Shown here in pieces: positions 40,476 to 62,076 of a stretch of 64,000 nucleotides of DNA. The stretch's first letter is position 1. Each line of letters begins with the position of its first letter. Below the pieces are notes generated by a model. It did no database searches, was not told where the DNA came from, and saw only the letters and a list, made by a program, of their open reading frames with translations. The stretch lies in IMG/VR virus record IMGVR_UViG_3300031997_000001, positions 171,459 through 235,458 of that record; one strand, 5' to 3'. Made by a program: the position numbers and the translations under genes.

Positions 40476-40662
40476 CATGACAGATCAAGAAAAGGTCTGC
40501 GGGACGTGCAAGCATTATACGCAATTCCAACAGACGAATTGCGGGGATTGCGCTATGAAGCCGCCTTTTCCCGATAATCCCAATACCCGGGAAGGCACCT
40601 GGGATGACATGAGCTGTCCGCGGTGGGAGTCTGTGCAGCTAGCCCCACCTGAGTTGCCGAAT

Positions 40663-41303
40663 CTAGACCAGAACCCGCCTACAGCCTAATCCGAACGGCA
40701 AGTCCGGCACGACCACGATGACTTTTCTTTCCACTGTCTCGATTTCCGACTCTTCTTCGGCTCTTATTTCTTCCGGGTCCAAATATCTCCGGCCAATGAC
40801 GCTGAAAGTACTGCGCCACACGGCTTCCCTTCTCTTCTCCTCTGCCTTTATCGCCACCCTACGCTTCGCTTCCTGGACCTGCTCTATAAGGTCTTTAAGA
40901 ATCTGTTCATCGACCTCTTTGGCCATCTGCTGGGACATTGCCTGGATCAGTTCTTCTTGAAGTCGCTCTCCTATGTCAATGCCGTGAACCGCCTTTAGGT
41001 CTTCCACAGCCTCTACGGACCAGGCTGCCTTCAGCCCTTTCATGGACGGTGTCGGCATTGGTTGCACGCTGACCAGACTATCGGCGAAGTCTTGAGCAAG
41101 GGAAATGTAAAATTCTTCTCGAATGAATTTGCGGGTGAGGGTGTGCCGAACTCTTTTACGAATTCTTCCTGGCTTGAGATGATTTTGGGCAGAGGCCCTT
41201 TGGGTATTTTACCTATGACCCCCGCCCATTTCTTTATAATCTCATTCGGGACATAACCAACCTCGTCGATGAAGGAATACTTTTTGGCTTTTGGCGCGTC
41301 CAT
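40663..41303 (-). pseudogene. miniature T4 gp23-like (major capsid) gene, split by a frameshift near 41090
   Basis: IIKKWAGVI, FTFPLLK // DFADSLVSVQPMPTP, LKAAWSVEAVEDLKAVHGID...EVDEQIL. Confidence 0.6.
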
Positions 41304-41332
41304 GGAATTAAAATACGAACCAAAAGTATCGT

Positions 41333-41929
41333 ATGGCATTCGAACGTCTGCTCTGTGAAGTCCTCGGCCTCGAGGTCATCATAACCGACATCGACGATAC
41401 CCTCGTCGCGGTCGGGAATCGGGCAGTAGAGTCCCTCAGGCAGCTCGACATCGAGGCCACCCCCGAGGACTGGGAAGAAAAGCTGGATGCCCTAAAACAG
41501 AAGGCGAAGCAATCCCAGGAGGATAGGGACAAGGTCAGTCAGTTCTTCAAGATGTTCCTGGACGACGCCTTCACGCATCTGGATGCGCCACATAGAGCCA
41601 TTTACGATTTCATCCGTATCCTGGCCAGCAAGTCAAGCCTCCCCGTGGTAGCCGTCTCCGGCCGGCCGGAAAAGATGATCAACAGCGCCATGAAGATACT
41701 CAAAGGCATTCCGCTGACGGACATCATCCTGAAGCCGGAAGGCCAGCGGATGCTAAAAGCGCCGGAATACAAGGTGGATGCCATTAGAAGGAAGAATTAC
41801 ATACCCAAGTTCGTAATTGATGACGAGCCGACTGTCCTGGACGCGATCGGGAAGGAATGGCCCGACGCCGTCCTCTATAGGGCACATAACGGAAGCATAG
41901 TCCCCTATTTTAGCAAAGATCAGACATGA
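41333..41929 (+). CDS. HAD phosphatase (polynucleotide kinase 3'-phosphatase-like)
   Basis: DIDDTL, VSGR, K, VIDD motifs. Confidence 0.8.
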   Translation: MAFERLLCEVLGLEVIITDIDDTLVAVGNRAVESLRQLDIEATPEDWEEKLDALKQKAKQSQEDRDKVSQFFKMFLDDAFTHLDAPHRAIYDFIRILASKSSLPVVAVSGRPEKMINSAMKILKGIPLTDIILKPEGQRMLKAPEYKVDAIRRKNYIPKFVIDDEPTVLDAIGKEWPDAVLYRAHNGSIVPYFSKDQT

Positions 41930-44147
41930 CATTCCTGGAACGGCTGGAACAGGCGATCAACGAAGTCATTTCCGGGCGCCATGCGATGGCTCTCGATCCG
42001 CGGACGTTCTTCGATGTAAAGCTTACCAATGACCGCTCGGTCGGTGACATCATCGAGGTGGACTGGCGGGCCGAGCTCAAGCATGACAAGCCGGATTTCG
42101 GCAAGAAGAGGCCCATCGCGGCGGATGGCGTTGCGGTCGCGGCTCCGGGCCAGAAGGCAGAAATAGAAGTCCTGGAGTGGGAAGTGGGCGGCGTGACGAT
42201 TCCCAAGAACCTCTGGCACAACAACGTCCGCGGCGAATGGGAAGCCGCGATCGAGAAGGACGTGCGGGCCGCCGTAGCGAACCTGGCATCGGAGAAGAAG
42301 GCAGAGGTGCCGCCTCCGCTCCCTAATGCTGCTCCTGAGGAGCCGCCTCCACTTCCTTCACGCACTGGATACCCAGAGTCTTTACGGCAGAGACTAAATC
42401 AATTGCTGGGCGAGGTTTGATGCCCGGCGAGATCCCGACAAGCTTGTACTGGAAGTTGTAGATCATCCTCCGTATGCATCCGTGGCAGACCCAGACATAG
42501 GCACCATCCCACTTATCTTCTGTGCGTTCGGCCACGCCCTGGCAGTACCTGCAGGTTGTTTCCATGGCGGCATCAAACCACAAGATTCGTTTGGCGTCAA
42601 TAATTCACTGTCTCGTATTTAAAAGCCATGTCTCCCATGCCTCTATCTGGTTGGGCTGGAGTCCAGGGCGGCCAAGGCGGCAACCAGGGTCGTTATGTGC
42701 AGAAGGCCGCAGACTTCCAGGCTATACAGAAACTCAACGATGGTCCTCCCCTCTCAAAAGATGGATATAGACAGTTCTTCTCCAAGAAACAGAGTTCTGC
42801 GGGAATATTCTTCACCGCACTAGACAAAAAGTGGAACAAAATCGGTATAACCATCCGGGGGCAGATCGATACGGACTTCGGTCCCTCCTGCATCGCTAAG
42901 GTGATGGACCTATCCGAGAAGGACGAAATTCAGAAGATCGCAGAATCGCTCGAAAAGAAGACGATGGTCTTCAAGATCAAGATAACGAACATGGGCACGC
43001 CTTATGAACCGGCCCTGGTCGTCAAGAAGACAGTGGACGTGCAGGATAGCTGGAACGGGCTTTGCAACATCCTCCTCGACGACATTACCGTTGGGCCGAT
43101 CAAGAGCAACTGGAATGTTAATATCGTGGTCACGCGGGAAGGAACTGATCCGCAGGATACCTTCGAAGGTACGTTTAATTTGAAGGATATGGAGGTATTT
43201 CTTCCGCAGGTCGCGGAGGAAATGCGAGAGGAAATGCAGGCCCAAAAAGAAGGCGCGCCAAATGTGCAAAAACAGCTCGATGAGGCGATGAAGAATCTCG
43301 AGTCGATTACGAAGGCCGTAAAAAAGCTCCAAAGTCCTCTCACCGTCCTAGATCCAAATACGTTTGAGCTAGTTCCGGCGCCACAAATGCCTGTCCAGCC
43401 AAGCGCGGCAACCCTGCCAGGCGTCATCACCGCTGAGGTCCTGAAGAACTGCGATATGGCGACGCTGCAGAAATTGAAGCAGCTCGGCATCCTGCAATTG
43501 GAAAGCAAGATCCTGCAATTGGAAAGCAAGCAGGTTCCTATTTTTGGCGACCCACTCTCCCCTCCCGCGGTCATAGACAAGCCGTCGGGATTGCCGCTTG
43601 GCAAGATGGGAGGCAGAAAGGTGGATCTAACATGAGCCCGTTAGCAGAACTCATCAAGAAATGGACAAGCAAGAAGGGAAAGGCAAGTATCCTCCCGAAG
43701 CCGATCACAGCTCCCGGAGCTGTCAATCCTAATTGGAATCCGTTGGCGGTAGACGAAGAAGTCTACATGCCTCTGGGCGTACAAGGGCTTGTGGGCGGCC
43801 CGGGAGTCCAGGGCTGGCAAGGGTCTGTGGGCTGGCAAGGGTCTGTGGGCTTGCAGGGTCTTGGAGGCTACCAGGGAGGCAGTCAGGGCAGTTGGGGCGG
43901 TTGGACCCCTGGTAATCAGGGGTTCAATAACCCGCCGCAGGCGGTCCAGGTCTCCGTCTCTTCCGCCCCCGTGAATGGGGTCAGGGAGGTCACGCTGACT
44001 GCAGAGGGCCTTGGCAAGAAGATCTCCATCCAGGGATTTGGCGTGCTGGTCTGGGACGGGAAGGAATGGCGTCTGGACGGGAGGAAGGCGGGCGAGATAG
44101 CTTCTGGTCCGATCGGCGAACTCGGAAATCGGATCATTTCTTTCTGA
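41926..44147 (+). CDS. hypothetical proteins 41926-42420, 42628-43635 (21-nt tandem duplication at 43489-43530) and 43632-44147 (Gly-x-Gln-Gly repeats)
   Basis: Long clean ORFs; GxQG repeats include an 18-nt tandem DNA repeat. Confidence 0.65.
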
Positions 44148-47730: not shown

Positions 47731-48713
47731 ATTATTGATTTGGCGTGCTCGAGCATCTTATCCGCCTCCCCTACAAATCCTACCGTCCTCAGCAACCCCG
47801 CCAGCCTGTGGAAATAAGTGTGCCCGTCCAGGATGTCCCTTCGCTGTCTCCGGGCGAGTTCCTGCCGCTGTGGTTCCATCTCCGGTCTGGACCATTTGAC
47901 ACAGAGCTCTATGAACTCCATCGGCCCATTCGCCATAACGATGTTCGGCGAGAATCGTTCCAGGCCCTTTATAGGATCGTGGACGGCCAGGGCGCCACAG
48001 AGGATGACCTTGAATGCCCGCTCTGGTAAATCTATTCCCCATTGCGTGGTATGGGGTTCGGCAACGCAGGGGCAGACTCGGCATCTCGAAAAGAAACCAG
48101 CCACGTCCTCGTCCCGAATGACACCAGAGCTGATCCCGGGCTGCCAACCGCCCCAGCCATGGACTTTACAGCCAAGTGTCTTGTTTGAGAAAAGGGGGAA
48201 CAGGTATCTGTCCAAATTCTTGGCCTTGTAATCCCAGCGACCGCCAACGTACCCTATGGGGATGTCGCGCGGCACCGGGGCGTTTGTTAGACCTTGCCTG
48301 GAATAGAAGACAGTGGCATCCCCGGCCGTAGCCATCGGCACCCAAGGGATGCCATGTTTTGAAGTCCAATACTCCCAGAATCTCCCGTCGTCTTTGTGGC
48401 CGTATCCGAATACGGCATCTGGCCGTTGCGCGAGAGTCCAGTTTATAGCCTCCTGTGGCTCATCAATGCCTTTAATTTTTTCTGGCCCGTAAGGGTTCAC
48501 ATGGACGGCCAATTTTGTTCTGCCGCGCGGTGCGGGTATGGGTTGGCGGTGGCCAGAACATGCGATTATCAGATCCGGATCAAATATATTCCAGGAGCTT
48601 TGTTTGCCGTCCCAGCGTTGCGCTTGGTGACCCGCGGCAATGAAGGCATTGAGCCATCCATCTGATATGAAGCTGAAAGCGCCCCCGGGTCTATGTGGTA
48701 ATAGCACGCGCAT
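47727..48713 (-). CDS. CgeB-like (GT-B) glycosyltransferase
   Basis: DIPIGYVGG, CKVHGWGGW, PERAFKVILCGA, HTYFHRL. Confidence 0.75.
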   Translation of the reverse strand: MRVLLPHRPGGAFSFISDGWLNAFIAAGHQAQRWDGKQSSWNIFDPDLIIACSGHRQPIPAPRGRTKLAVHVNPYGPEKIKGIDEPQEAINWTLAQRPDAVFGYGHKDDGRFWEYWTSKHGIPWVPMATAGDATVFYSRQGLTNAPVPRDIPIGYVGGRWDYKAKNLDRYLFPLFSNKTLGCKVHGWGGWQPGISSGVIRDEDVAGFFSRCRVCPCVAEPHTTQWGIDLPERAFKVILCGALAVHDPIKGLERFSPNIVMANGPMEFIELCVKWSRPEMEPQRQELARRQRRDILDGHTYFHRLAGLLRTVGFVGEADKMLEHAKSII

Positions 48714-49812
48714 ATCATCTATGTACTTTTTGCCAATAGATTCGCAGCATCGGCGACTAAAGATAGGTACTATCGTCGGCCATCTAAAAGTGGTGAGTCG
48801 CCCTTTTCATATGCAACATGAACCAAAGCGCGTTTTCTATAAATTCTACTGCGAATGTGGTAATAAATGCGTAAAGTGCATATCAGAAGTGAATTATGTG
48901 GCAAAATCATACCCGCCACATTGTGGGTGCCGCGCAAGGGAACATTTATCAAGAAGCCAAACTAATCTTACCCCAAGGTGCAACGTATGTGGCACTACCG
49001 AGTTATCCCGCTTCAGACCAAAACGCAAGAATATTTGTTATGAGTGTAGGAAATTAAAGAAAAGACTAGAAAGTAGAGAAAGGCAAAGTAGCCCGGCTAG
49101 GCGACGGCAGCACAACGACTCCATAAAACAACACAGAGAGAGCACTCCGGAAAACTTCCTCAGATCCGCTCTGGCAAGGCTACGAAAACCTTGCGATTTT
49201 GGCATTGAATACCTAATGCAGCTATGGGAACGTCAAAATGGAAGATGTAAAGCCACCGGCATTAAAATGACACACTGCTTTAGACATCTTCTTTCAGTAT
49301 CTATTGACCGCATCGATAACAATATGGGGTATAACAAAGGAAATATTAGACTGGTATGCAAATGGGTAAATTTGGGCCGTCGAAGACATACGGCCAGAGA
49401 ATTTAGAGAAACACTAAAACAGTTTAGAAATGGCGGCGGTCGGGAATACAATACCAATGATACCAAAATCAGAACATACTTCAGGCATTTATTCCGAGTA
49501 ATAAGACAACGTATTCATAGCAAAATATTCAAAAGACGAAAGGGTTTTAACCATAACTTAACGCTCTATTTCTTATGTGATCTTTATAAGAGTCAAAAAG
49601 GACGATGCGCTATCACGAAAGTGCCGATGAGACTCCAGGGAGGTCATCTAAATTCCTGTAGCATCGACAGGATAGAGAATTCGACTGGCTATCTAAAGGA
49701 TAACATCCAATTGGTATGCGTGTGGGTCAATTTGGCTCGGAGCTATCACGCGTTAATTGAATTTAAAAGAATGCTCCGAGCACATCAATCTAAATGCCCA
49801 GGCTATCCATGA
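48640..49812 (+). CDS. HNH-type endonuclease with two tandem nuclease domains (likely start 48721)
   Basis: GRC..T.....SIDRI.N..GY...NI.LVC.WVNL.R occurs twice; markedly lower GC; antisense insertion. Confidence 0.8.
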   Translation: MKALSHPSDMKLKAPPGLCGNSTRISSMYFLPIDSQHRRLKIGTIVGHLKVVSRPFHMQHEPKRVFYKFYCECGNKCVKCISEVNYVAKSYPPHCGCRAREHLSRSQTNLTPRCNVCGTTELSRFRPKRKNICYECRKLKKRLESRERQSSPARRRQHNDSIKQHRESTPENFLRSALARLRKPCDFGIEYLMQLWERQNGRCKATGIKMTHCFRHLLSVSIDRIDNNMGYNKGNIRLVCKWVNLGRRRHTAREFRETLKQFRNGGGREYNTNDTKIRTYFRHLFRVIRQRIHSKIFKRRKGFNHNLTLYFLCDLYKSQKGRCAITKVPMRLQGGHLNSCSIDRIENSTGYLKDNIQLVCVWVNLARSYHALIEFKRMLRAHQSKCPGYP

Positions 49813-54412: not shown

Positions 54413-55264
54413 TTAGTTTATCCTGGTTAGATTTTTGAATGGGAGGACGAATCTATGGAATTCCCCAATGAGACCCCGGATTTTGAGCCGCATGGCCGCT
54501 GATTCGATAGCAGGCCCGTTGAAGACAGGACGCGAGGACCTAATAGCCTTGACGTACTTGACGTTGTCCTCAACGAAAGGGCATTTCGACATGTCGATGA
54601 GGAACCTATTGTCGACGAGCGTTTTGATACCCCTGGCCTTCAGGAAAGCCTTCATTTCACCATCATTCTCGCAGAGCTTCGCAGCCCTCTTTGGGCCTAT
54701 GCCGACATAACCGGGAATGTTGTCGGCCTTGTCGCCCATCATGCACTTCATTAAAAGAGGATACCTATATTCCTTCCGGTGTCCCGTGTGCATCGGATTG
54801 AAGACGTGGACGTTTCCCTTCTCGAGTTGTACGAAATCGCTATCGCTGGAGACTATCGTCGCGGACTCCTTGTCCTGCAGGGTCTGGATGAACGCGTAGA
54901 TCAGATCATCCGCTTCCTGGGTCTCGCGGAAGTACATCCGGATGCCCATCTCTGGTATGATAGTCATGGCAACATTGACGCAATCCGCCATGACTTTATC
55001 GACATCAAAGGCGTTCCTCTTGTCGCGCTCCGCCTTCCTTTGGGCCTTATAAGCCGGGAAGAATTTCCGACGCCAGAGGTTTTCCGGCTTGTCATCCCAG
55101 AATACGTGGATCTCTGATGGCCTGAACGTGCGGAGGTAGTGGTGGAGGAACCGGACGAAGATGATGACGGTATGGAATCCGGACTTCCGGAAGGCAGGGT
55201 CCGCCATCCCCGCGAACATGGCGCGGTAGATCGAATTGCGGCCGTCTACCAGCAGATGCTTCAT
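54413..55264 (-). CDS. 5'-3' exonuclease / T4 RNase H-like flap nuclease
   Basis: LLVDG.N..YR, VFWD, YKAQR, EADD, SSDSDF, GDKADNIPG..GIGPKRA. Confidence 0.9.
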   Translation of the reverse strand: MKHLLVDGRNSIYRAMFAGMADPAFRKSGFHTVIIFVRFLHHYLRTFRPSEIHVFWDDKPENLWRRKFFPAYKAQRKAERDKRNAFDVDKVMADCVNVAMTIIPEMGIRMYFRETQEADDLIYAFIQTLQDKESATIVSSDSDFVQLEKGNVHVFNPMHTGHRKEYRYPLLMKCMMGDKADNIPGYVGIGPKRAAKLCENDGEMKAFLKARGIKTLVDNRFLIDMSKCPFVEDNVKYVKAIRSSRPVFNGPAIESAAMRLKIRGLIGEFHRFVLPFKNLTRIN

Positions 55265-55271
55265 AAAGAAA

Positions 55272-55293
55272 CGGGCGCGGTGTCCCGCGCCCG
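55272..55293 (-). terminator. intrinsic terminator after SSB gene
   Basis: CGGGCGCGG/CCGCGCCCG stem followed by TTTCTTT. Confidence 0.7.
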
Positions 55294-55321
55294 CCTCCGA
55301 TTACGTTTCAGCAGAGACCGG

Positions 55322-56389
55322 CTACTCGTCCTTGATCTCTTTCAAGAGACTGTCGATTTCCGCATCCGCGATCGGCCCGCCATCCGCCGGTGATTCCTCA
55401 GGTTCCGGCGCAGCCTTAGCCGCCGTGGCGGGCTTCGCCGGCTTGGTAGGGGCTTCCTCCGTAACCTCGTCCTGGAATTCCTCTGCAGGAGGAGCGGGTT
55501 TGGCTGCCGCAGGCTTTGCGGCCGGAGCAGGCTTGGCTGCTGCTGGCGCGGGTTTGGCTGCCGCAGGCTTCGCGGCCGGGGCGGGCTTGGCTGCCGCGGG
55601 CTTTTCCTCCGTGTGGTCCTCATGGAATCCGGCATCATCGCCAGCGGTGGTCGGCGACTTCTTCAGGATGTTGTCCACCTTCGCCTGGAGCGCTGCCAGG
55701 TCGCGTGCGGCGAACTTCGTGGGCACGTCATGCCGCCTGGACAGGATCTCCTTGATCTTGGCCTCGTCCTTGGACAGGGGGCCCTTGGTCGTGACCAGGA
55801 ACTTGGACTCCTCGTAGTTGTTGTAGCCGCCCTTGCTCTTGATGACGACCTTCATGACGTACCCGGCCTTCTCGTCGTAGAACAGGCCGAACGGCGCGGG
55901 ATCGTCCTCGCTGCCGGCATCGTCCCGCAGAATGCACTCCTCGCACTTGTCGTAGAGCGTCTTCGGGATGTTGGCCCAGAAGACCTTGCCGCGGAGGTCT
56001 TCCTGGACGTTGGTAGACTGTGGGAAGTAGATGTTGACGCCGTAGTAGCTCCTGGCGAGGTACGTCTTGGCGATCTTGCTCTTCTGCTCCTTGTCCATTC
56101 CGTCCATCAGCTGGAAGCCGAGCTGACAAAGCGGGCACTCCGCCCCCTGTTCATGAATGCGCGGGCATTCCAGCCGCTTCATGTCCAGGAAGTGGCTGCC
56201 GTTCATGTAGAACCAGAGGTCGCCCATGCTCGGAACGGGCGGTAGAAACTTGATGTAGTAGGTGAGCGTCTCGTTTTCCTTGGCCTTGGGGAACCGGAAC
56301 TCGTTCGGATCCTTCTGCCCGCCGCCCTTCTTGTCCTGCATCAGCTTGCGGATCCTGGCAATGTCCTCGTTCTCGCGGATCACGGTCAT
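55322..56389 (-). CDS. T4 gp32-like single-stranded DNA-binding protein with AAKP repeats and acidic tail
   Basis: IKFLPP, H...CP...ECP.C, YYGVNIY, GKVF, GYNNYEESKF, acidic C-terminus. Confidence 0.8.
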   Translation of the reverse strand: MTVIRENEDIARIRKLMQDKKGGGQKDPNEFRFPKAKENETLTYYIKFLPPVPSMGDLWFYMNGSHFLDMKRLECPRIHEQGAECPLCQLGFQLMDGMDKEQKSKIAKTYLARSYYGVNIYFPQSTNVQEDLRGKVFWANIPKTLYDKCEECILRDDAGSEDDPAPFGLFYDEKAGYVMKVVIKSKGGYNNYEESKFLVTTKGPLSKDEAKIKEILSRRHDVPTKFAARDLAALQAKVDNILKKSPTTAGDDAGFHEDHTEEKPAAAKPAPAAKPAAAKPAPAAAKPAPAAKPAAAKPAPPAEEFQDEVTEEAPTKPAKPATAAKAAPEPEESPADGGPIADAEIDSLLKEIKDE

Positions 56390-56425
56390 GACTTCCTCCT
56401 TTAATGGTTCTCCGTGAAATACGGC

Positions 56426-56959
56426 TTACACGCTGCCGGCGTCCCTGAGCTCCTGTCTCTTGAAGCCCGCCAATGACCGCAAGTGCTCAGACTTCATCTT
56501 TAACGCCTCTACGATGTTGTAGAGCTTGCCGGAGGACCTCTGCGCGATTAGGAGCTCCGCTTCCAGCTTCTCTAGAATGTCATCTGCTTCGATGAGCTCC
56601 TTTATGTCTGCGGCGCGCAGGGAGACACCCTCCGCCTTTGCCGTGTTAAGGATCTGCTCTGCGACGATGGCCCTGCGCCTCTTTATCTTGCGCTCAAAGA
56701 CGCCGACGACCATCTTCTGTTCACTCATGACTCCGGCCCAGTAGGAAAAGGCGCTTGGCGTCCTTGCAAGCTGCTCTTCGAGATTGTCGTAGTCTATTTC
56801 TACGTCGGTCCTAAAGTCCCGAGAGATAGTTCCGCCGCCTGGCACCTTGACGTGGATGCGGACGACGATGTTCGCAACGTCCTCCGGGATGTTGTCGGCA
56901 AACCATTTGTTCTTGGGAGCTGTCATCGGATTTCCTTGTAAAGCTTCCATTTCTTCCAA
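56426..56959 (-). CDS. UvsY-like recombination mediator
   Basis: Helical; ID..L..QL...P..F.YW...EALKMKS..LRS; sits next to the SSB gene. Confidence 0.55.
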   Translation of the reverse strand: MEEMEALQGNPMTAPKNKWFADNIPEDVANIVVRIHVKVPGGGTISRDFRTDVEIDYDNLEEQLARTPSAFSYWAGVMSEQKMVVGVFERKIKRRRAIVAEQILNTAKAEGVSLRAADIKELIEADDILEKLEAELLIAQRSSGKLYNIVEALKMKSEHLRSLAGFKRQELRDAGSV

Positions 56960-58107
56960 TGACGGCCGACGTAAATCCGGAGCGGAAACGTCGGATTGCT
57001 GTCCAGTATGTCCTTGAACGGATGGAGCATGGCTTCGACGCCGACGTTCAGAACCTCCTTGATCGCGTGCCTATTCGCCGCCAGAGTAATCGAGTCGTGC
57101 ATCTCTGCCACGATGCAGTCGGGCATCGCCTTGTAAATCTGCCAGAGGGCACTATGCATGGCGTGCACCACCGTCCCCTGGAGCGAGGCGTTAAATACGC
57201 TCCTCATATTGTGGAGAGGATCGCCTTCTGTAGCCATCCGGAACCTTCTACCCAGGACGGACTCCGTCCAGCCTCTGTTTTCCAGCTTAGCCTTCTCGAC
57301 GGCGACCCATTTCTGAAGATCCGGCCAGAACTGAAGGGCCGGGCTATCCTGGTCCATTTCGTAGAGAGCGCGAATCATCATGCTCTTGCAGTCTGCCCGG
57401 GTCAGATCTCCCTTCGCCATGACGGTGTAGGGGTCGGACTTCCTGAAGGCTTCTGCAAGAAGCTCGTCTCCGCTCAGGATCTGACCAGCCTTAAGATCTG
57501 CCGAGATCCAGTCCAGATGGATGAAATAGGATTTTTCTTCATCGGGGTGCTTTACGTCGTAAGACGCATCCGTCCCTTGGACGTTGAAACCTAGCGTCTT
57601 TGACCGGCCGCTGACCGTGTTGAGGATATATCGAGGATAGGCGAGAAGGTGACCATTCATGAGGCCACGCTTCTGGAGCATACGATAGACCTGCGTGGCT
57701 CTTCCGAGCAGTTTCATCCAGGGAGCGGGCTGGATGCTGGCAACGCCACGGACGAGCTTCTCGCAGATCTCCTTGGCCCTCTCGGCGGACAACGTACCGT
57801 AATTCGGCTGCTTCGGGATGCCAAAATCCCAGACGTTAAACGGATGCGCCAGTAGGTTGCATTCGCGGTCCAGGAAATCAAGGACCGTTTTGAAGTCGTT
57901 CATCGTTACGGCGGGAAGAGGACTCCCTTTGAATTCTCCAAGGATGGCCTTTGCGCTCTCCCAGACCGTCTTCAAGCTGAGACCGACGCCAGAGAGAAGC
58001 AGGGGGTACGATCTGACGGCATCACTCCCGTCGTCCATGAAGGCAGCCATGAGCGGACGAGAGGACTGCTTCGTGTACTGACACATTACGAAGGCGTGCT
58101 TGGACAC
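56923..58107 (-). CDS. minimal, divergent family-A DNA polymerase-like protein
   Basis: SGR...FNVQ, motif A HLDWISADLK, motif B R..CK.......Y, NASLQGT, motif C EMHDS; no exonuclease domain visible. Confidence 0.7.
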   Translation of the reverse strand: MSKHAFVMCQYTKQSSRPLMAAFMDDGSDAVRSYPLLLSGVGLSLKTVWESAKAILGEFKGSPLPAVTMNDFKTVLDFLDRECNLLAHPFNVWDFGIPKQPNYGTLSAERAKEICEKLVRGVASIQPAPWMKLLGRATQVYRMLQKRGLMNGHLLAYPRYILNTVSGRSKTLGFNVQGTDASYDVKHPDEEKSYFIHLDWISADLKAGQILSGDELLAEAFRKSDPYTVMAKGDLTRADCKSMMIRALYEMDQDSPALQFWPDLQKWVAVEKAKLENRGWTESVLGRRFRMATEGDPLHNMRSVFNASLQGTVVHAMHSALWQIYKAMPDCIVAEMHDSITLAANRHAIKEVLNVGVEAMLHPFKDILDSNPTFPLRIYVGRHWKKWKLYKEIR

Positions 58108-58408
58108 GGAGATGAAATACTTTCCGGTCGGAAATAACGGCAGACGCCCGGGAGAATGCTGACTTTCCAGCCCGAATTGAAGAGTGCGTCCAGTTGGTCA
58201 TCCCGCCAGATGAGCTCGAGCTCACATCCGAAGTGCTTCTCTAGGAAGGCTTGAATCTCCTTATCCTTCTCTCCAAGGTAGGCCATAGTACAGCTCGGAT
58301 TTGAGACGAAGATCTGCGCGCCCTCTCCACATTTGCGACAGATGGCGCTGTACCACGTTTTCATTTGAAGTAGACCTGGCGACCCTGGAAAACGCATTCC
58401 ACAGTAGC

Positions 58409-58768
58409 TCATTTCTTCTTGATCCCGTGGGTCGCGATGACCTTCGGGTGTCCCTGGTGCTTGCCGCCCTTTCGGAGCTTGTCCACCAAGTCCGCTTTCT
58501 CGCCCGGCTGGCGCATATAACCATAGGGGTCGTCGTTCTCGAGTTGGTGTAGGTTCATACTACGCCTGGCGCCTGCCTTATCTCTGACCAGCCCATTGCC
58601 AGGGAAGAAGAACTGGAACGTCATCCCCAGCCAAGTCCTCTTACAGGGCTTCTTGCACTGGGGACAGAGGACTTCCGGCTTCTGGTTCATGCCGTGATTG
58701 ACTTCGAAGACGAAATCCTGACTATCTTCCGTCTTGTGATGTTCGCAGATGTAGTTGTAAGTTGGCAT
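58409..58768 (-). CDS. FmdB-family zinc-ribbon protein
   Basis: MPTYNY.C....FE..H.M...P...CPQC. Confidence 0.75.
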   Translation of the reverse strand: MPTYNYICEHHKTEDSQDFVFEVNHGMNQKPEVLCPQCKKPCKRTWLGMTFQFFFPGNGLVRDKAGARRSMNLHQLENDDPYGYMRQPGEKADLVDKLRKGGKHQGHPKVIATHGIKKK

Positions 58769-60180
58769 TAGGAATTCCCGCCTACCGTCGTAATGTTGAC
58801 GGCCGGCTCGTCCTCCTTGGCCTTCATGGTGACGTAGTTCATACGGATAGCTACTGTCTCGGACTTCGGACCGTTCCGATTCTTGGCGATGAAGAGTCTC
58901 GCTCGGGCGGCTGTGTTTTCAGCCCGGCTCGCGTCGTAGCCGGCCTCGTATTCGTTCTTCGTCTGATTGATACTCACGACGTAGGAAAGCGGCATAGATT
59001 TCCCGAAGGACTCTGCGATCTTATCCAGGTCGATTGACTTCCCGCCGCCAGTCCCGGCCGTCTTCTTGCTGGACTGCTCTTCCTCGTTCATGCCGTACCG
59101 GTTGGTCTGCGTCGCCGTGAAGACTGCCACGTTTTCCTTGTCGGCGAATCCGCACAGCTCCGTGGAGATGGACTTCTGTCTAGCGTAATCGTCCCGGTTC
59201 ATGAACTTGTTCCGCGAGACCATGAGTTCCAGGTAGTCGATAATCACGACTCTCGGATTGAAGCCCTTGTTCCGCCTCAGGAAGTCCATGACCTGATGGA
59301 GGGTGTCTACGCTGACCTCGTCCGCAGGAAACTTGTAGAGGACGAGTTCCGCTCCATAATGGGCCTTGCATCGGCTCAGGATTTGCGTGATCTGATCCTT
59401 GTGCGCCATCCGATGCATATGCGTGACGACCGGCACATTGGTGAATGCGCCGGCGTACCTGACTTGGGTCTTCTTGATGTCTCCTTCGAAGGAGAAGTGT
59501 ACGACGTTGTGCCCAGCCCGTACGTTAGCCTCTCCCGTGTTGCAGAGCATGTAAGTCTTGCCGACGTTGGTCGGAGCCATCCAGACGAAGACGTCGCTTA
59601 TCGTAGGCCCGCCGTCGTTGATGTACCTATCAAGCTTCGGGAAGCCCGTCGTGAACTTGATTTCATTCTCTTCCGTGAAGAGCTCGTGAGCGCGCTCGAA
59701 GAACCAGATTCCCGTCTGGCTGACGTCGGTGATCTTCCTGGCTGATTCGACGATCTCGTTTACGCGGTCAAAGTTCCCGCGCGAGACTTCCTCCATGACT
59801 TCTTTGGAGTAAAGGAGACCCAGGGCACGACGTTTGGCGAATTCGACGACGGACTGCTTGACGACCGGAGCTTCCCGAGGATCAGATTGCTTGTCGATGA
59901 GGGAGATGATCGGCTCGTAGTCGTCATCGACCGTCAGGTTCTTCCTGGCAATGTCCTTTACCAGGCCGCGAGTCGGCGATACCCGGTGCTTCTCTATGAG
60001 TTTCTTGATGATGGCGAATAGGAACTTGGACGGGATGTGCTTGAAGTGATCGATCTGGAGGTAGGGCACGACGGAACTGAAGAACTCTGGTAGGTCGAAG
60101 GCCAGCGCTATGATCGCCTGCTCTTCGTTCTCGCCGAACGTGCGAGAATCCTTATCGTGAAGGGTCTGTTCGTCTGACAT
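58768..60180 (-). CDS. DnaB/gp41-like replicative helicase
   Basis: TGFPKLD, APTNVGKT, FSFE, IIDYLELM, TATQTNR, AESFG, IAKNRNG. Confidence 0.9.
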   Translation of the reverse strand: MSDEQTLHDKDSRTFGENEEQAIIALAFDLPEFFSSVVPYLQIDHFKHIPSKFLFAIIKKLIEKHRVSPTRGLVKDIARKNLTVDDDYEPIISLIDKQSDPREAPVVKQSVVEFAKRRALGLLYSKEVMEEVSRGNFDRVNEIVESARKITDVSQTGIWFFERAHELFTEENEIKFTTGFPKLDRYINDGGPTISDVFVWMAPTNVGKTYMLCNTGEANVRAGHNVVHFSFEGDIKKTQVRYAGAFTNVPVVTHMHRMAHKDQITQILSRCKAHYGAELVLYKFPADEVSVDTLHQVMDFLRRNKGFNPRVVIIDYLELMVSRNKFMNRDDYARQKSISTELCGFADKENVAVFTATQTNRYGMNEEEQSSKKTAGTGGGKSIDLDKIAESFGKSMPLSYVVSINQTKNEYEAGYDASRAENTAARARLFIAKNRNGPKSETVAIRMNYVTMKAKEDEPAVNITTVGGNS

Positions 60181-60189
60181 TCTTTTTGT

Positions 60190-60600
60190 TCAGCTAAATA
60201 GATATGCTTGTGCCAGACCTCGTCGTGCATTGCGACACCCAACTTTTCGAAAGTGTCTCTTTATGGAATCGAGATACTTCACGGCCTCCTGGGGCGATAG
60301 GTCGGCTGGAATCGTGACGCAAAGAGTTTCCCGACCAACACGTTCCACGTGCATAGAGAATTTCCGACCATTTCTGGCCCGTTGGATGTCGTGGATTAGA
60401 GCGACGTCCTCGGCGAGCAGCAGTCTCCTGCGGTAAAGCTCTGCCTTCTTATGGTCCCCAATCGATTCGCAATGCTCTACTTTGTGCCGCCAATAGGCTA
60501 GGTCGTCTTCTCCATTCGGAATGGCTGCTTCTGTCTTGCGTCCGAGCAGGGGTGCAAATGGGAGGAGTGTGAGGGCTTTTAAAAGAGATCGTCTGTTCAT
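60190..60600 (-). CDS. small protein with twin-arginine-like N-terminus and T4 portal (gp20)-like segment
   Basis: MNRRSLLK; LLLAEDVALIHDIQRA...PADLSPQEAVKYLDSI. Confidence 0.5.
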   Translation of the reverse strand: MNRRSLLKALTLLPFAPLLGRKTEAAIPNGEDDLAYWRHKVEHCESIGDHKKAELYRRRLLLAEDVALIHDIQRARNGRKFSMHVERVGRETLCVTIPADLSPQEAVKYLDSIKRHFRKVGCRNARRGLAQAYLFS

Positions 60601-60989
60601 GGGGCACTCCCAGTTGATCCGGCGCTCCCGCTTCCAGGCGGAGTCGGACCGGTGCTTCCCGATCCCGGTGAAACCGAGCATCTGGCGGCAAGCCGAGCCC
60701 TTTCCTCCCGCAACCTTCTCTCGAGATTTTGCACGACGAGCGTCTCTGCCTCGCAGAACGTCAGAAGTTCATCTTCCGTGAAGTAGAGCGTCTGGATGCG
60801 CTTCAGGTCAATATGGTCGCCGAGCGTCTGAGCGGACGGCGGCCTCCTGTTGATGTCGATCGTGTAAACATATCGGTCGTTCCTGAGCTGGAAGATCCCG
60901 CTGATCTTGTAGGCTTCCAGGAAGCCGATCTGCGCCGAGGACCTTAGATACACGACGTCATCGATCCGGAATGCGCTGACAATAGCCAT
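60597..60989 (-). CDS. hypothetical protein
   Basis: 130-aa ORF coupled to 60600. Confidence 0.65.
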   Translation of the reverse strand: MAIVSAFRIDDVVYLRSSAQIGFLEAYKISGIFQLRNDRYVYTIDINRRPPSAQTLGDHIDLKRIQTLYFTEDELLTFCEAETLVVQNLERRLREERARLAARCSVSPGSGSTGPTPPGSGSAGSTGSAP

Positions 60990-61020
60990 AGCCAGACTCC
61001 TATTGGGCCTGGCGTATCTT

Positions 61021-62076
61021 TTATTCCTCCGGCGCTTCCTCCTCCGGTTTGCTGATGATCACGTCCCTCTTCCGGATCTCCTCCCGGACCAGGTTCTCCA
61101 GTTCCGCTGTTATCTCGGGCCTTTCTACAAGGAATTTAAGAGCTTGATCTATGCCGTTCCCAATCTTTTCGTCCTTGAAGCAAATCCAGGCGCCGGCCCT
61201 CTTCAGGATACCACACTGCTCCGCCATGTCGGCAATGCAAGCTTCCCTTTGGATGCCTCTCCCGAAGACGAGTTTGAATTCGGCCTGGCGGAACGGCGGG
61301 GCGACCTTGTTCTTCTGGACCTTGGCGCGGACGATGATGGCGACGGCATCGTCTCCTTCCTTGACGGTCGAAAGGCGCCTGATCTCGATCCGGACAGACG
61401 CCCAATATTTCAGAGCGCGGCCTCCGGATGTCGTCTCCGGATTTCCGAACATGACTCCGATCTTCTCTCGCAGCTGGTTCGTGAAAATGACGCAGGTCTT
61501 CGTCTTGTTTACGATGGGCGCCAGCTTGCGTAAGGCTTTTGACATGAGGGCTGCCTGGGCGCCCATCTGCTTATCTATGAGGTCGCCTTCCAATTCTGCC
61601 TGGGGGACCAGGCCGGCGACGGAATCGATGACGATAAGGTCCATGGCATTCGATGCTACGAACCTCTCGACGATGGTTAAGGCTTGTTCGCCGCTGTTTG
61701 GCTGGGAAAGGTAGAGCTTGTCCATGTCCAAGTTGATCTTCTTGGCGTAGGCAGAGTCAAAGGCGTTCTCGACGTCGACGAACATTGCCCGGCCCTTCTC
61801 GGCCTGGACGTTCTTGACGATCTCCATGCAGAGCGTCGTCTTCCCTGACGCTTCAGGGCCATAGATTTCCGTGATACGGCCACGAGGAACTCCCCCAATC
61901 CCGAGGGCGATGTCCAGACGAAGGGATCCCGTCGGAATAGCCTCAACGTCGCGGATGATGGTCTGCCCGTGCATGACAGACCCCTTGCCGAAATCCTTCT
62001 CGACGGAATCCCAAGCGTGCTTGATGGCCTGCTCTTCGGCCTTGAAGTCCTGGGACTCATCTTTTTCTTTCGCCAT
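61021..62076 (-). CDS. recA: RecA recombinase (bacterial type)
   Basis: PTGSL.LD.ALG.GG.P.GRI.EIYGPEASGKTT, IDSVA.L.P.AE.EG, FTNQLR, GG.ALKY.ASVR, KNKVAPPF. Confidence 0.97.
   Translation of the reverse strand: MAKEKDESQDFKAEEQAIKHAWDSVEKDFGKGSVMHGQTIIRDVEAIPTGSLRLDIALGIGGVPRGRITEIYGPEASGKTTLCMEIVKNVQAEKGRAMFVDVENAFDSAYAKKINLDMDKLYLSQPNSGEQALTIVERFVASNAMDLIVIDSVAGLVPQAELEGDLIDKQMGAQAALMSKALRKLAPIVNKTKTCVIFTNQLREKIGVMFGNPETTSGGRALKYWASVRIEIRRLSTVKEGDDAVAIIVRAKVQKNKVAPPFRQAEFKLVFGRGIQREACIADMAEQCGILKRAGAWICFKDEKIGNGIDQALKFLVERPEITAELENLVREEIRKRDVIISKPEEEAPEE

What the first reader, a model, noticed from the sequence alone, without database searches (positions are those of the whole stretch)
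40663..41303. Miniature, internally deleted T4 gp23-like capsid gene split by a frameshift
Seen: two overlapping ORFs join into KKW..VI / FTFPLLK-DFADSLVSVQPMPTP / LKAAWSVEAVEDLKAVHG...EVD.QIL. From recall of gp23, these are its N-terminal KW motif, the P.L..VQPM..P motif and the LKA.YS.ELAQDL.AVHG motif. In gp23 the last two are separated by a long stretch; here only about 5 aa separate them. The segment SSQEEFVKEFGTP also resembles a tail-sheath N-terminal motif (weaker). Inference: a capsid-assembly modulator or dominant-negative decoy against related phages, or a decaying relic.
Basis: partly seen in the sequence, partly recalled or inferred. Interest (0 to 1): 0.6.

Follow-up and report, generated by a model that had tools for sequence, protein, structure and literature searches.

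The report
Split mini copy of capsid gene
A huge sediment phage carries a fast-evolving mini gene cut down from its own gp23-type major capsid gene; here a 22-base deletion splits it in two, and it may act as a capsid mimic, which is untested.

Summary
On the minus strand, ORF-A (41040-41339) and ORF-B (40663-41067) overlap. ORF-B matches Pfam Gp23 above the curated cut-off (E 1.2e-9).

The frameshift is a real 22-bp deletion between 41089 and 41090. Sister strains carry one intact ORF of 220/232 aa. Both alleles recur in several sediment samples.

The intact protein is colinear with residues 11-111 and 298-347 of a related phage's capsid protein. It therefore lacks about 186 aa (E-loop plus insertion) and everything after the spine helix. 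In place of that it has a family-specific, conserved tail of about 55 aa.

Selection differs by region:
- Helix and tail: dN/dS 0.19-0.42.
- The linker holding VQPM: indel-prone and decaying.
- Whole gene: dN about 7 times that of the neighbouring gene.

In the split allele the ORF-A stop overlaps an ATG (ATGA) that opens a 126-aa ORF. That ORF encodes exactly the conserved core.

The gene lies among nucleic-acid repair and accessory genes, not in a head module. The 235-kb record is incomplete. Relatives have full-length gp23-type capsid proteins.

A separate conserved family of about 104-aa spine-helix-only proteins exists in other huge phages.

The function is untested. My best guess is a capsid-protein mimic used in conflict (a decoy).

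The parts
40663..41339 (-). Whole mini-gp23 locus, from the M1 ATG at 41339 (gene callers use the M13 ATG at 41303) to the stop at 40663-40665. In this genome it is split into two reading frames.
   Evidence: The intact 232/220-aa allele is in sister contig L006:3870-4568.
41040..41339 (-). ORF-A: the N-terminal part (99 aa from M1, 87 aa from M13). It holds the KKW segment (W38 codon 41226-41228) and FTFPLLK (41091-41111). After the deletion junction come 14 out-of-frame codons, then the TGA at 41040-41042.
   Evidence: Colinear with capsid protein residues 11-111 of a relative. The 87-aa product is on record as P0003 on 4 contigs.
41089..41090 (.). Junction of the 22-bp deletion. The intact allele has AAATTCACGCCGGGATTCACTT (+ strand) inserted behind 41089.
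   Evidence: Alignment A1. A contig from run X3 carries the insert, and the contig from probable-source run X1 lacks it.
40663..41067 (-). ORF-B in the +1 frame (134 aa from GTG). It encodes VQPMPTPS, the E-loop return strand, the spine helix and the tail.
40663..41043 (-). 126-aa ORF whose ATG (41043-41041) overlaps the ORF-A stop TGA (41042-41040) as ATGA. It encodes exactly the conserved core (strand, spine helix, tail). Translation by coupling is inferred, not shown.
   Evidence: Read from the sequence. JGI gene calls give 87-aa and 126-aa ORFs with a 4-nt overlap. On record as P0076.
40876..41040 (-). gp23-homologous block: E-loop return strand (LKAAWSVEA) plus spine helix.
   Evidence: Pfam PF07068 positions 148-198, E 1.2e-9. 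Matches T4 gp23 263-306. AF2 helices 116-126 and 132-193 have pLDDT 83-98.
40666..40827 (-). Family-specific C-terminal tail (EAVWRSTFSVIGRRYLDPEE...VERKVIVVVPDLPFGLGCRRVLV). It is not gp23-like and is strongly conserved.
   Evidence: Alignment A4 invariant columns. dN/dS 0.19-0.34. No informative Atlas match.

Best explanation
What it is (confidence about 0.9).
This is a genuine, lineage-restricted accessory gene made from the phage lineage's own gp23-type (HK97-fold) major capsid gene by two large losses. The intact allele (220/232 aa) consists of:
- the capsid protein's N-terminal segment (KKW helix);
- a decaying N-arm/VQPM linker;
- the E-loop return strand and spine helix, joined directly to that linker;
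- a new, conserved tail of about 55 aa.

It lacks the E-loop, the insertion domain, most of the P-domain sheet and the whole A-domain. It therefore cannot be a shell subunit.

In this genome a recent 22-bp deletion in the dispensable linker splits the gene. The ORF-A stop overlaps an ATG (ATGA), so the conserved core may still be made as a 126-aa protein. That step is inferred.

How it most likely works (inference, about 0.3).
It is a capsid-protein mimic used in conflict. It would display the conserved N-terminal and spine-helix surfaces of the capsid protein outside the capsid. That could titrate a factor that recognises newly made capsid protein, most plausibly a host abortive-infection sensor. 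The tail would supply a second, unknown interaction.
For: Shown:
- A significant Gp23 profile hit, and colinearity with relatives' capsid proteins at 11-111 and 298-347. The KKWA.VI.K.P similarity is specific to this lineage.
- Intact and split alleles both occur in independent samples.
- Purifying selection on helix and tail (omega 0.19-0.42, p down to 2e-6). The N-part overall is near neutral (0.70). dN is 7 times that of the adjacent HAD gene (0.146 vs 0.021).
- The linker has independent indels in P0001 and P0079.
- The gene sits alone on the opposite strand among HD, P-loop kinase, GNAT-like and HAD/PNKP-like genes. RtcB-like and NAD-dependent-ligase-like ORFs (named from reading their sequences) lie elsewhere in the genome.
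- A second, independent and well conserved family of about 104-aa strand-plus-spine-helix proteins exists in huge-phage contigs up to 462 kb. It is likewise a lone opposite-strand gene, next to DEAD helicase, RNase T-like, RNA ligase and kinase genes.

From the literature:
- Capsid proteins are known triggers of defence: Gol-Lit (PMC3014915) and CapRel (PMC9712102).
- MCP-binding Avs sensors are also reported (bioRxiv 10.64898/2026.01.04.697583).

Fast evolution, indels and presence/absence polymorphism are typical of conflict genes. That last point is inference.
Against: - There is no expression data; no listed run holding the stretch is on record as RNA.
- No binding partner is known.
- AF2 is confident only for the long helix.
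- Co-folding with a relative's capsid protein gave no verdict.
- The cognate capsid protein is not on the record, and the host is unknown.
- The Gol-like VQPM segment, the one capsid epitope with a documented sensor, is not conserved in the family. That argues against a Lit/EF-Tu type decoy specifically.
- The split allele circulates in at least 3 samples, so the full-length protein is dispensable at least in the short term.
- The family is tiny: six clusters at 90% identity.
- The neighbourhood argument is guilt by association.
Confidence: 0.45

Rival explanations
1. Head-assembly factor or internal head protein of the phage itself. The capsid-derived N-terminal segment and spine helix both face the prohead interior in T4-type heads. 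They would dock the protein onto the scaffold, protease or unassembled capsid protein. It would then act as a chaperone, a size modulator or a packaged (possibly ejected) protein.
For: - The conserved modules are precisely the N-terminal KKW segment and the spine helix.
- A V-K-E site (FVKE|FG) lies where gp23-type propeptides are cleaved. The L/I-x-E rule of the T4 protease is from my own recall.
- Relatives use gp23-type capsid proteins, so a cognate partner is expected.
- T4 internal-protein genes are also scattered outside the head module (own knowledge).
Against: - The gene evolves 7 times faster than its neighbour and carries indels.
- A split allele persists in several samples.
- It was not detected in the partial records of relatives G005-G009.
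- It is not next to any head gene.
- Co-folding gave no verdict, which is no evidence either way.
Confidence: 0.2
2. Dominant-negative weapon against co-infecting gp23-type phages. The fragment would co-fold or co-assemble with a competitor's capsid protein and poison its capsomers.
For: - It retains the most conserved capsid segments.
- It has conflict-like evolution.
- Many related huge phages share these sediments: one search found 143 sheath relatives.
Against: - There is a risk of self-poisoning, because the fragment derives from the phage's own capsid lineage.
- No evidence of binding exists (one search gave no verdict).
- An isolated strand plus helix has no obvious way to enter a folded HK97 subunit (inference).
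Confidence: 0.12
3. Non-functional relic. This would be a partial capsid gene duplicate, perhaps left by homing-endonuclease-driven rearrangement, that is simply decaying. The window copy would be the pseudogene end state.
For: - The window copy is frameshifted.
- The linker is indel-prone with omega about 0.7.
- A second capsid fragment ORF lies elsewhere in the genome, 2.5 kb from an HNH/Mom-like endonuclease.
- Another phage contig has Mom next to two Gp23-fragment ORFs.
Against: - ORFs are intact in at least 4 diverged lineages, with dS up to 0.8-0.9 and omega 0.19-0.42 on helix and tail.
- The non-capsid tail is almost invariant.
- The deletion is recent: the surrounding 600 nt are 100% identical to the intact allele.
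- It leaves a coupled ORF for the core.
Confidence: 0.12
4. Artefact or recoding. The frameshift would be an assembly or sequencing error, or would be read through by programmed ribosomal frameshifting.
For: Two overlapping frames that join into one homologous protein.
Against: - An independent assembly of the probable source run reproduces the deletion at word depth about 21.
- The same allele occurs on 4 contigs from at least 3 samples.
- The difference from the intact allele is a 22-nt indel, not a slip.
- There is no slippery heptamer or known +1 site in the 14-codon overlap (read).
Confidence: 0.03

Closest known systems
T4 gp23 / Pfam PF07068 Gp23 major capsid proteins (HK97 fold), including those of huge-phage relatives (L112, L113)
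   Same: - Homologous N-terminal KKW segment.
- F.FPLL(K/R)(K/R)V...LVSVQPM..P segment.
- (R)KLKA.WS.EA.(E/Q)DL...HG.D block and spine helix.
   Different: - About 186 aa are missing (E-loop plus insertion domain), along with all about 170 aa after the spine helix (P-domain sheet, A-domain).
- It has a new tail.
- It is not in a head module.
- It evolves fast.
- It cannot form a capsomer.
T4 Gol peptide of gp23 (activator of the e14 Lit protease through EF-Tu)
   Same: The intact window-lineage allele contains the homologous, most conserved quarter of the capsid protein, including the VQPM region. A stand-alone fragment of gp23 is known to be biologically active in Gol-Lit (PMC3014915).
   Different: - The Gol-like segment is degenerate or deleted in other family members.
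- The conserved parts here lie elsewhere.
- Gol is part of gp23, not a separate gene.
- EF-Tu binding was not tested.
P0009 family: about 104-aa 'strand + spine helix' Gp23-fragment proteins of huge phages (unnamed, apparently undescribed)
   Same: - A stand-alone E-loop return strand plus spine helix with the same RKLKA.WS.EA.QDL...EID.EI..DL pattern.
- A lone opposite-strand gene in an accessory, nucleic-acid-enzyme region.
   Different: - No N-terminal capsid segment.
- A different tail (FRFKNRKKKILPRSIDDDWQVSRFD).
- Probably an independent derivation.
Capsid-protein paralogues with altered roles (T4 gp24 vertex protein; the PICI Ccm capsid homologue that redirects capsid size)
   Same: Derived from a major capsid gene and acting, or proposed to act, through capsid-protein interfaces (own knowledge).
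   Different: Those keep the complete HK97 fold and are built into shells. This one keeps under 45% of the fold's sequence and no shell-forming domains.

Membership tests
Pfam PF07068 Gp23 / HK97-fold major capsid protein | Significant match to the family profile | tested here: met
   E 1.2e-9 (ORF-B) and 3.6e-10 (intact allele), both above the 24.4-bit cut-off. Only profile positions 148-198 of 376 are covered.
Pfam PF07068 Gp23 / HK97-fold major capsid protein | Complete fold: E-loop, P-domain sheet and A-domain (full-length coverage) | tested here: not met
   Colinear only with capsid residues 11-111 and 298-347 of 516. A custom HMM of 30 full-length capsid proteins matches only positions 83-97 and 248-304 of 462. 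The AF2 model shows one long helix.
Pfam PF07068 Gp23 / HK97-fold major capsid protein | Encoded in the head module beside protease, scaffold or portal genes | tested here: not met
   Neighbours are HD, P-loop kinase, GNAT-like and HAD/PNKP-like genes. No T4-type portal, TerL-C or prohead protease is on the record. Compare the typical module in L031.
Pfam PF07068 Gp23 / HK97-fold major capsid protein | Assembles into capsomers or the shell | not testable with these tools
   Needs expression or virion proteomics. The missing domains make it implausible (inference).
Gol-type gp23 peptide (Lit/EF-Tu) | Conserved Gol-region sequence (VQPM block) retained under selection | tested here: not met
   Present in the window/L006 lineage, degenerate in P0001 (VNQPPPP) and absent in P0079. 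The N-part omega is 0.70, not significant.
Gol-type gp23 peptide (Lit/EF-Tu) | Binds EF-Tu domains II/III and activates a Lit-type protease | not testable with these tools
   The host is unknown and no assay is possible. The feature is described in PMC3014915.
Programmed ribosomal frameshift gene | Slippery site, with the frameshift conserved among homologues | tested here: not met
   Homologues are single ORFs. The difference is a 22-nt indel. No slippery motif lies in the overlap.
P0009-type mini spine-helix proteins | Stand-alone strand plus spine helix of gp23 | tested here: met
   Alignment A2. The 126-aa ORF of the split allele has the same layout.
P0009-type mini spine-helix proteins | Shared C-terminal KNRKKK...DDDWQVSRFD tail | tested here: not met
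   The tails do not align.

The most novel reading that the evidence does not exclude
Huge phages repeatedly domesticate the spine-helix segment of their own gp23-type capsid protein into small stand-alone proteins. The window family and the about 104-aa P0009 family would be two examples. These proteins would act as capsid mimics: decoys that blunt capsid-sensing host immunity, or that interfere with rival phages' capsid assembly. The split allele here would show the N-terminal part being shed while the core stays translatable through an ATGA overlap.
Probability: 0.25. Interest if true: 0.8.

Novelty: new variant of a known kind. Interest (0 to 1): 0.55.

Why it matters
Major capsid proteins are among the best documented triggers of bacterial abortive-infection systems (Gol-Lit, CapRel, Avs). 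No phage-encoded capsid-fragment decoy has been described in the papers I could search.

A conserved, selected mini-gene holding only the interior-facing, most conserved capsid elements would give a directly testable candidate. That holds even more so if it is one of several such families in huge phages. The candidate roles are a new counter-defence or inter-phage interference strategy, or an unknown capsid-assembly cofactor.

The natural intact/split allele pair offers a ready-made comparison.

If instead it is a slowly dying duplicate, the finding is a modest note on gene decay in huge phages.

Tried and rejected
- Search for the phage's own full-length capsid gene. Pfam PF07068 on the 235-kb record, tblastn with the XacN1, RM378 and PA5oct capsid proteins, and a custom HMM with --max found only two fragments. 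This is explained by the record being incomplete, not by absence.
- PHROG scans of 30 large ORFs for head genes found none.
- Pfam portal, terminase-C and protease searches found none.
- AF2 model: mean pLDDT 63.9, with only the long helix confident. I therefore ran no PDB fold search, which would be meaningless on a single helix.
- ESM Atlas on the tail: no usable feature hit, and only generic helical structure matches.
- Complex prediction of the mini protein with a relative's capsid protein: no verdict, so it is not evidence either way.
- Promoter and terminator scan: nothing found.
- RNA runs: none on record, so expression is unknown.
- Tail-sheath N-terminal resemblance: pairwise E 0.005 only; treated as probably chance.
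- Programmed frameshift and assembly error: rejected.
- 'Two unrelated genes': rejected because of the intact allele and the colinearity with capsid proteins.
- No alternative genetic code was used.

Full report
**Observation**

The feature lies on the minus strand.
- ORF-A is 41040..41339: 99 aa from M1, or 87 aa from the M13 ATG at 41303, which gene callers use.
- ORF-B is 40663..41067 (134 aa, GTG start). It overlaps ORF-A in different frames.
- ORF-B matches Pfam Gp23 (PF07068) positions 148-198 of 376 at E 1.2e-9, above the curated cut-off.
- It also matches phrog_138 'major head protein'.
- tblastn against deposited phages hits only annotated major capsid proteins of large myoviruses such as XacN1, PA5oct and RM378.
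- Against solved structures, the block aligns with T4 gp23 residues 263-306, and VQPM aligns with gp23 113-116.

**The frameshift**

A near-identical sister contig (IMG/VR 3300036761_003567; L006) has 22 extra nucleotides between window 41089 and 41090. It carries a single 232-aa ORF, or 220 aa from M13.

The restored segment reads FTFPLLKKVNPGVNFFADSLVSVQPM. This fits the capsid consensus F.FP(L/I)(L/I)RRV.P.LIA..LVSVQPM seen in dozens of full-length proteins.

Laying public assemblies on the stretch gave two results:
- An independently built 32.5-kb contig from the probable source sample has the deletion.
- A contig from another sediment sample has the 22 nt.

Exact-protein look-ups agree:
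- The split allele (87-aa plus 126-aa gene calls) is on 4 contigs from at least 3 samples.
- The intact 220-aa protein is on record from two further samples.
- At 90% clustering the intact form has more member sequences.

The deletion is recent. Window 40600-41199 is otherwise 100% identical to the intact allele, inside a strain mosaic that ranges from 54% to 100% identity.

The new stop of ORF-A (TGA, 41042-41040) overlaps an in-frame ATG of frame B (41043-41041). The split allele therefore has an ATGA junction in front of a 126-aa ORF (40663..41043). Translation by coupling is an inference. Programmed frameshifting is not supported.

**Origin**

The 235-kb record is not a complete genome, despite a CheckV estimate of 97%.
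- The sister contig runs 46 kb past its end, with no match to the rest of the record.
- That extension carries a 973-aa ORF whose N-terminus reads like a contractile tail sheath (named from reading its sequence).
- No T4-type portal, terminase-C or prohead protease is on the record.

Phages whose homologue of that sheath-like protein is 46-52% identical have CheckV estimates implying genomes of about 360 kb. They carry full-length gp23-type capsid proteins of 516-529 aa.

Against one of these capsid proteins the intact mini protein is colinear in two blocks:
- residues 19-106 with capsid residues 11-111 (E 3e-6), including a lineage-specific KKWA.VI.K.P match;
- residues 106-159 with capsid residues 298-347 (E 4e-10).

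The gene is therefore a cut-down paralogue of the lineage's own capsid gene. It is missing about 186 aa (E-loop and insertion domain) and everything after the spine helix.

The same genome holds a second capsid fragment ORF, outside the window at C1:122360-122764. It is 56% identical to a relative's capsid residues 89-133.

**Is it a gene or a relic?**

Across 1.84 billion representative proteins, only three clusters are close kin. At 90% identity there are six.

Codon comparisons of the intact allele gave these values:

| Comparison | Region | dN/dS | Note |
|---|---|---|---|
| vs P0001 lineage | whole gene | 0.37 | p 7e-6 |
| vs P0002 lineage | whole gene | 0.32 | p 3e-7 |
| both | helix | 0.19-0.42 | |
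| both | tail | 0.19-0.34 | |
| vs P0001 | N-part | 0.70 | not significant |

The adjacent HAD-like gene is 95% identical with omega 0.10. The mini gene's dN is therefore about 7 times higher.

Alignment A4 shows three conserved modules:
- the N-terminal about 55 aa with KKW;
- LKA.WSVEA.EDLK.V plus the helix;
- the tail WR.TF.IIGRRYLDPEE...VERK.IV.VPDLPFGLG.RR.L.

The linker is hypervariable. VQPM is degenerate in P0001 and the whole linker is gone in P0079. The 22-bp deletion falls in this linker.

AF2 is confident only for helices 116-126 and 132-193.

**Context**

The gene is alone on its strand. It starts 29 nt (or -7 nt, if M1 is used) from the divergent HAD/PNKP-like gene. Its neighbours are HD-domain, P-loop kinase and GNAT-like genes. 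RtcB-like and NAD-dependent-ligase-like ORFs, named from reading their sequences, lie elsewhere in the genome. A T4-like replication module lies 13 kb away.

No listed run holding the stretch is on record as RNA.

**A wider pattern**

The representative search also found other short Gp23-fragment proteins.
- One family of about 104 aa has at least 20 clusters down to 55% identity, on contigs up to 462 kb.
- It consists of the E-loop return strand, the spine helix and a KNRKKK...DDDWQVSRFD tail.
- It too is a lone opposite-strand gene, beside DEAD helicase, RNase T-like, RNA ligase and kinase genes.
- Two further proteins carry the VQPM block after the helix (P0049, P0052). One of them sits next to a Mom-like gene and another 88-aa Gp23 fragment.

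I found no description of such proteins in the searchable literature.

**Mechanism**

Shown:
- It is capsid-derived.
- It cannot be a shell subunit.
- The helix and tail are under selection.
- It evolves fast and is polymorphic.
- It lies in an accessory neighbourhood.

Inferred: it acts as a capsid-protein mimic.

I favour a conflict role, most plausibly a decoy for a host sensor of newly made capsid protein. Such sensors are documented in PMC3014915, PMC9712102 and bioRxiv 10.64898/2026.01.04.697583. The evolutionary tempo, the dispensability and the neighbourhood all fit accessory conflict genes better than core assembly factors.

The poor conservation of the Gol-like segment argues against a Lit/EF-Tu-type mechanism specifically.

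The rivals are:
- an assembly factor or internal head protein of the phage itself;
- a dominant-negative weapon against related phages;
- a decaying relic.

The single co-folding job, with a heterologous capsid protein, returned no verdict and is not used as evidence.

**Verdict**

This is a new, drastically reduced variant of the gp23 family. Its function is open but experimentally approachable.

Noticed in passing
G000:C1:122360-122764 (+), outside the window (L001:1417-1821): A second capsid-gene fragment: a 134-aa ORF whose residues 27-71 are 56% identical to a relative's capsid residues 89-133 (the Gol/VQPM block with the lineage-specific RYRY). An unrelated tail follows. It matches Pfam Gp23 positions 3-49 (E 3e-12). 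A 93%-identical 137-aa homologue exists.
   Followed up: partly
G000:C1:118292-119857 (+); window 48640-49812 (+): Two HNH-type homing-endonuclease-like genes in low-GC patches (GC3 0.42; window GC 0.478). The first has a Mom-like C-terminal half and lies 2.5 kb from the second capsid fragment. In another phage contig (L023) a Mom gene directly precedes two Gp23-fragment ORFs. Endonuclease-driven scattering of capsid gene pieces is possible.
   Followed up: partly
whole record G000 vs G001 (L025-L030): The 235,458-bp record, rated 97% complete, is a fragment. The sister contig continues 45.9 kb past its end with a 973-aa ORF that reads like a tail sheath, and other genes. CheckV values for relatives imply about 360-kb genomes. 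A 284,750-bp contig of the same phage exists in the protein collection.
   Followed up: yes
window 42400-43900: A hypervariable patch between strains (nucleotide identity falls to 54-76%) covers the 335-aa ORF 42628-43635, which has no family hit. It is flanked by blocks at 90-100% identity, so the region is mosaic and recombining.
   Followed up: no
window 41304-41332 and L114/L115/L020 upstream regions: Both mini-gp23 families have a divergent intergenic spacer of only about 26-29 nt. Each has an AT-rich motif 4-5 nt before the ATG (gTATTTTAATTcc here; cTTAAAATAAttc in the P0009 family) and no Shine-Dalgarno sequence. This could be a late-promoter-like or leaderless arrangement.
   Followed up: no
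window 54413-62076 (-): A T4-like replication module: exonuclease, gp32-like SSB, a DNA-polymerase-related ORF, a DnaB-like helicase and a UvsX-like recombinase (phrog_97, E 2.7e-83).
   Followed up: partly
window 1-36000 vs 36000-64000: GC content steps from 0.60-0.67 in the first half of the window to 0.48-0.57 in the second half. The mini-gp23 gene lies in the lower-GC part.
   Followed up: no
window 40477-40689 (+): A 70-aa Cys-rich ORF (C..C...C..C, then C) converges on the mini gene and overlaps its last 27 nt. It is conserved in the sister strain and has no family hit.
   Followed up: no
L006:3870-4565 residues 21-141 vs the tail sheath-like ORF L025:2103-5021 residues 10-133: A weak pairwise similarity (E 0.005, 24% identity) that includes SSQEEFVKEFGTP against STSEQWVNTFGTP. 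It is probably chance but was not excluded.
   Followed up: partly
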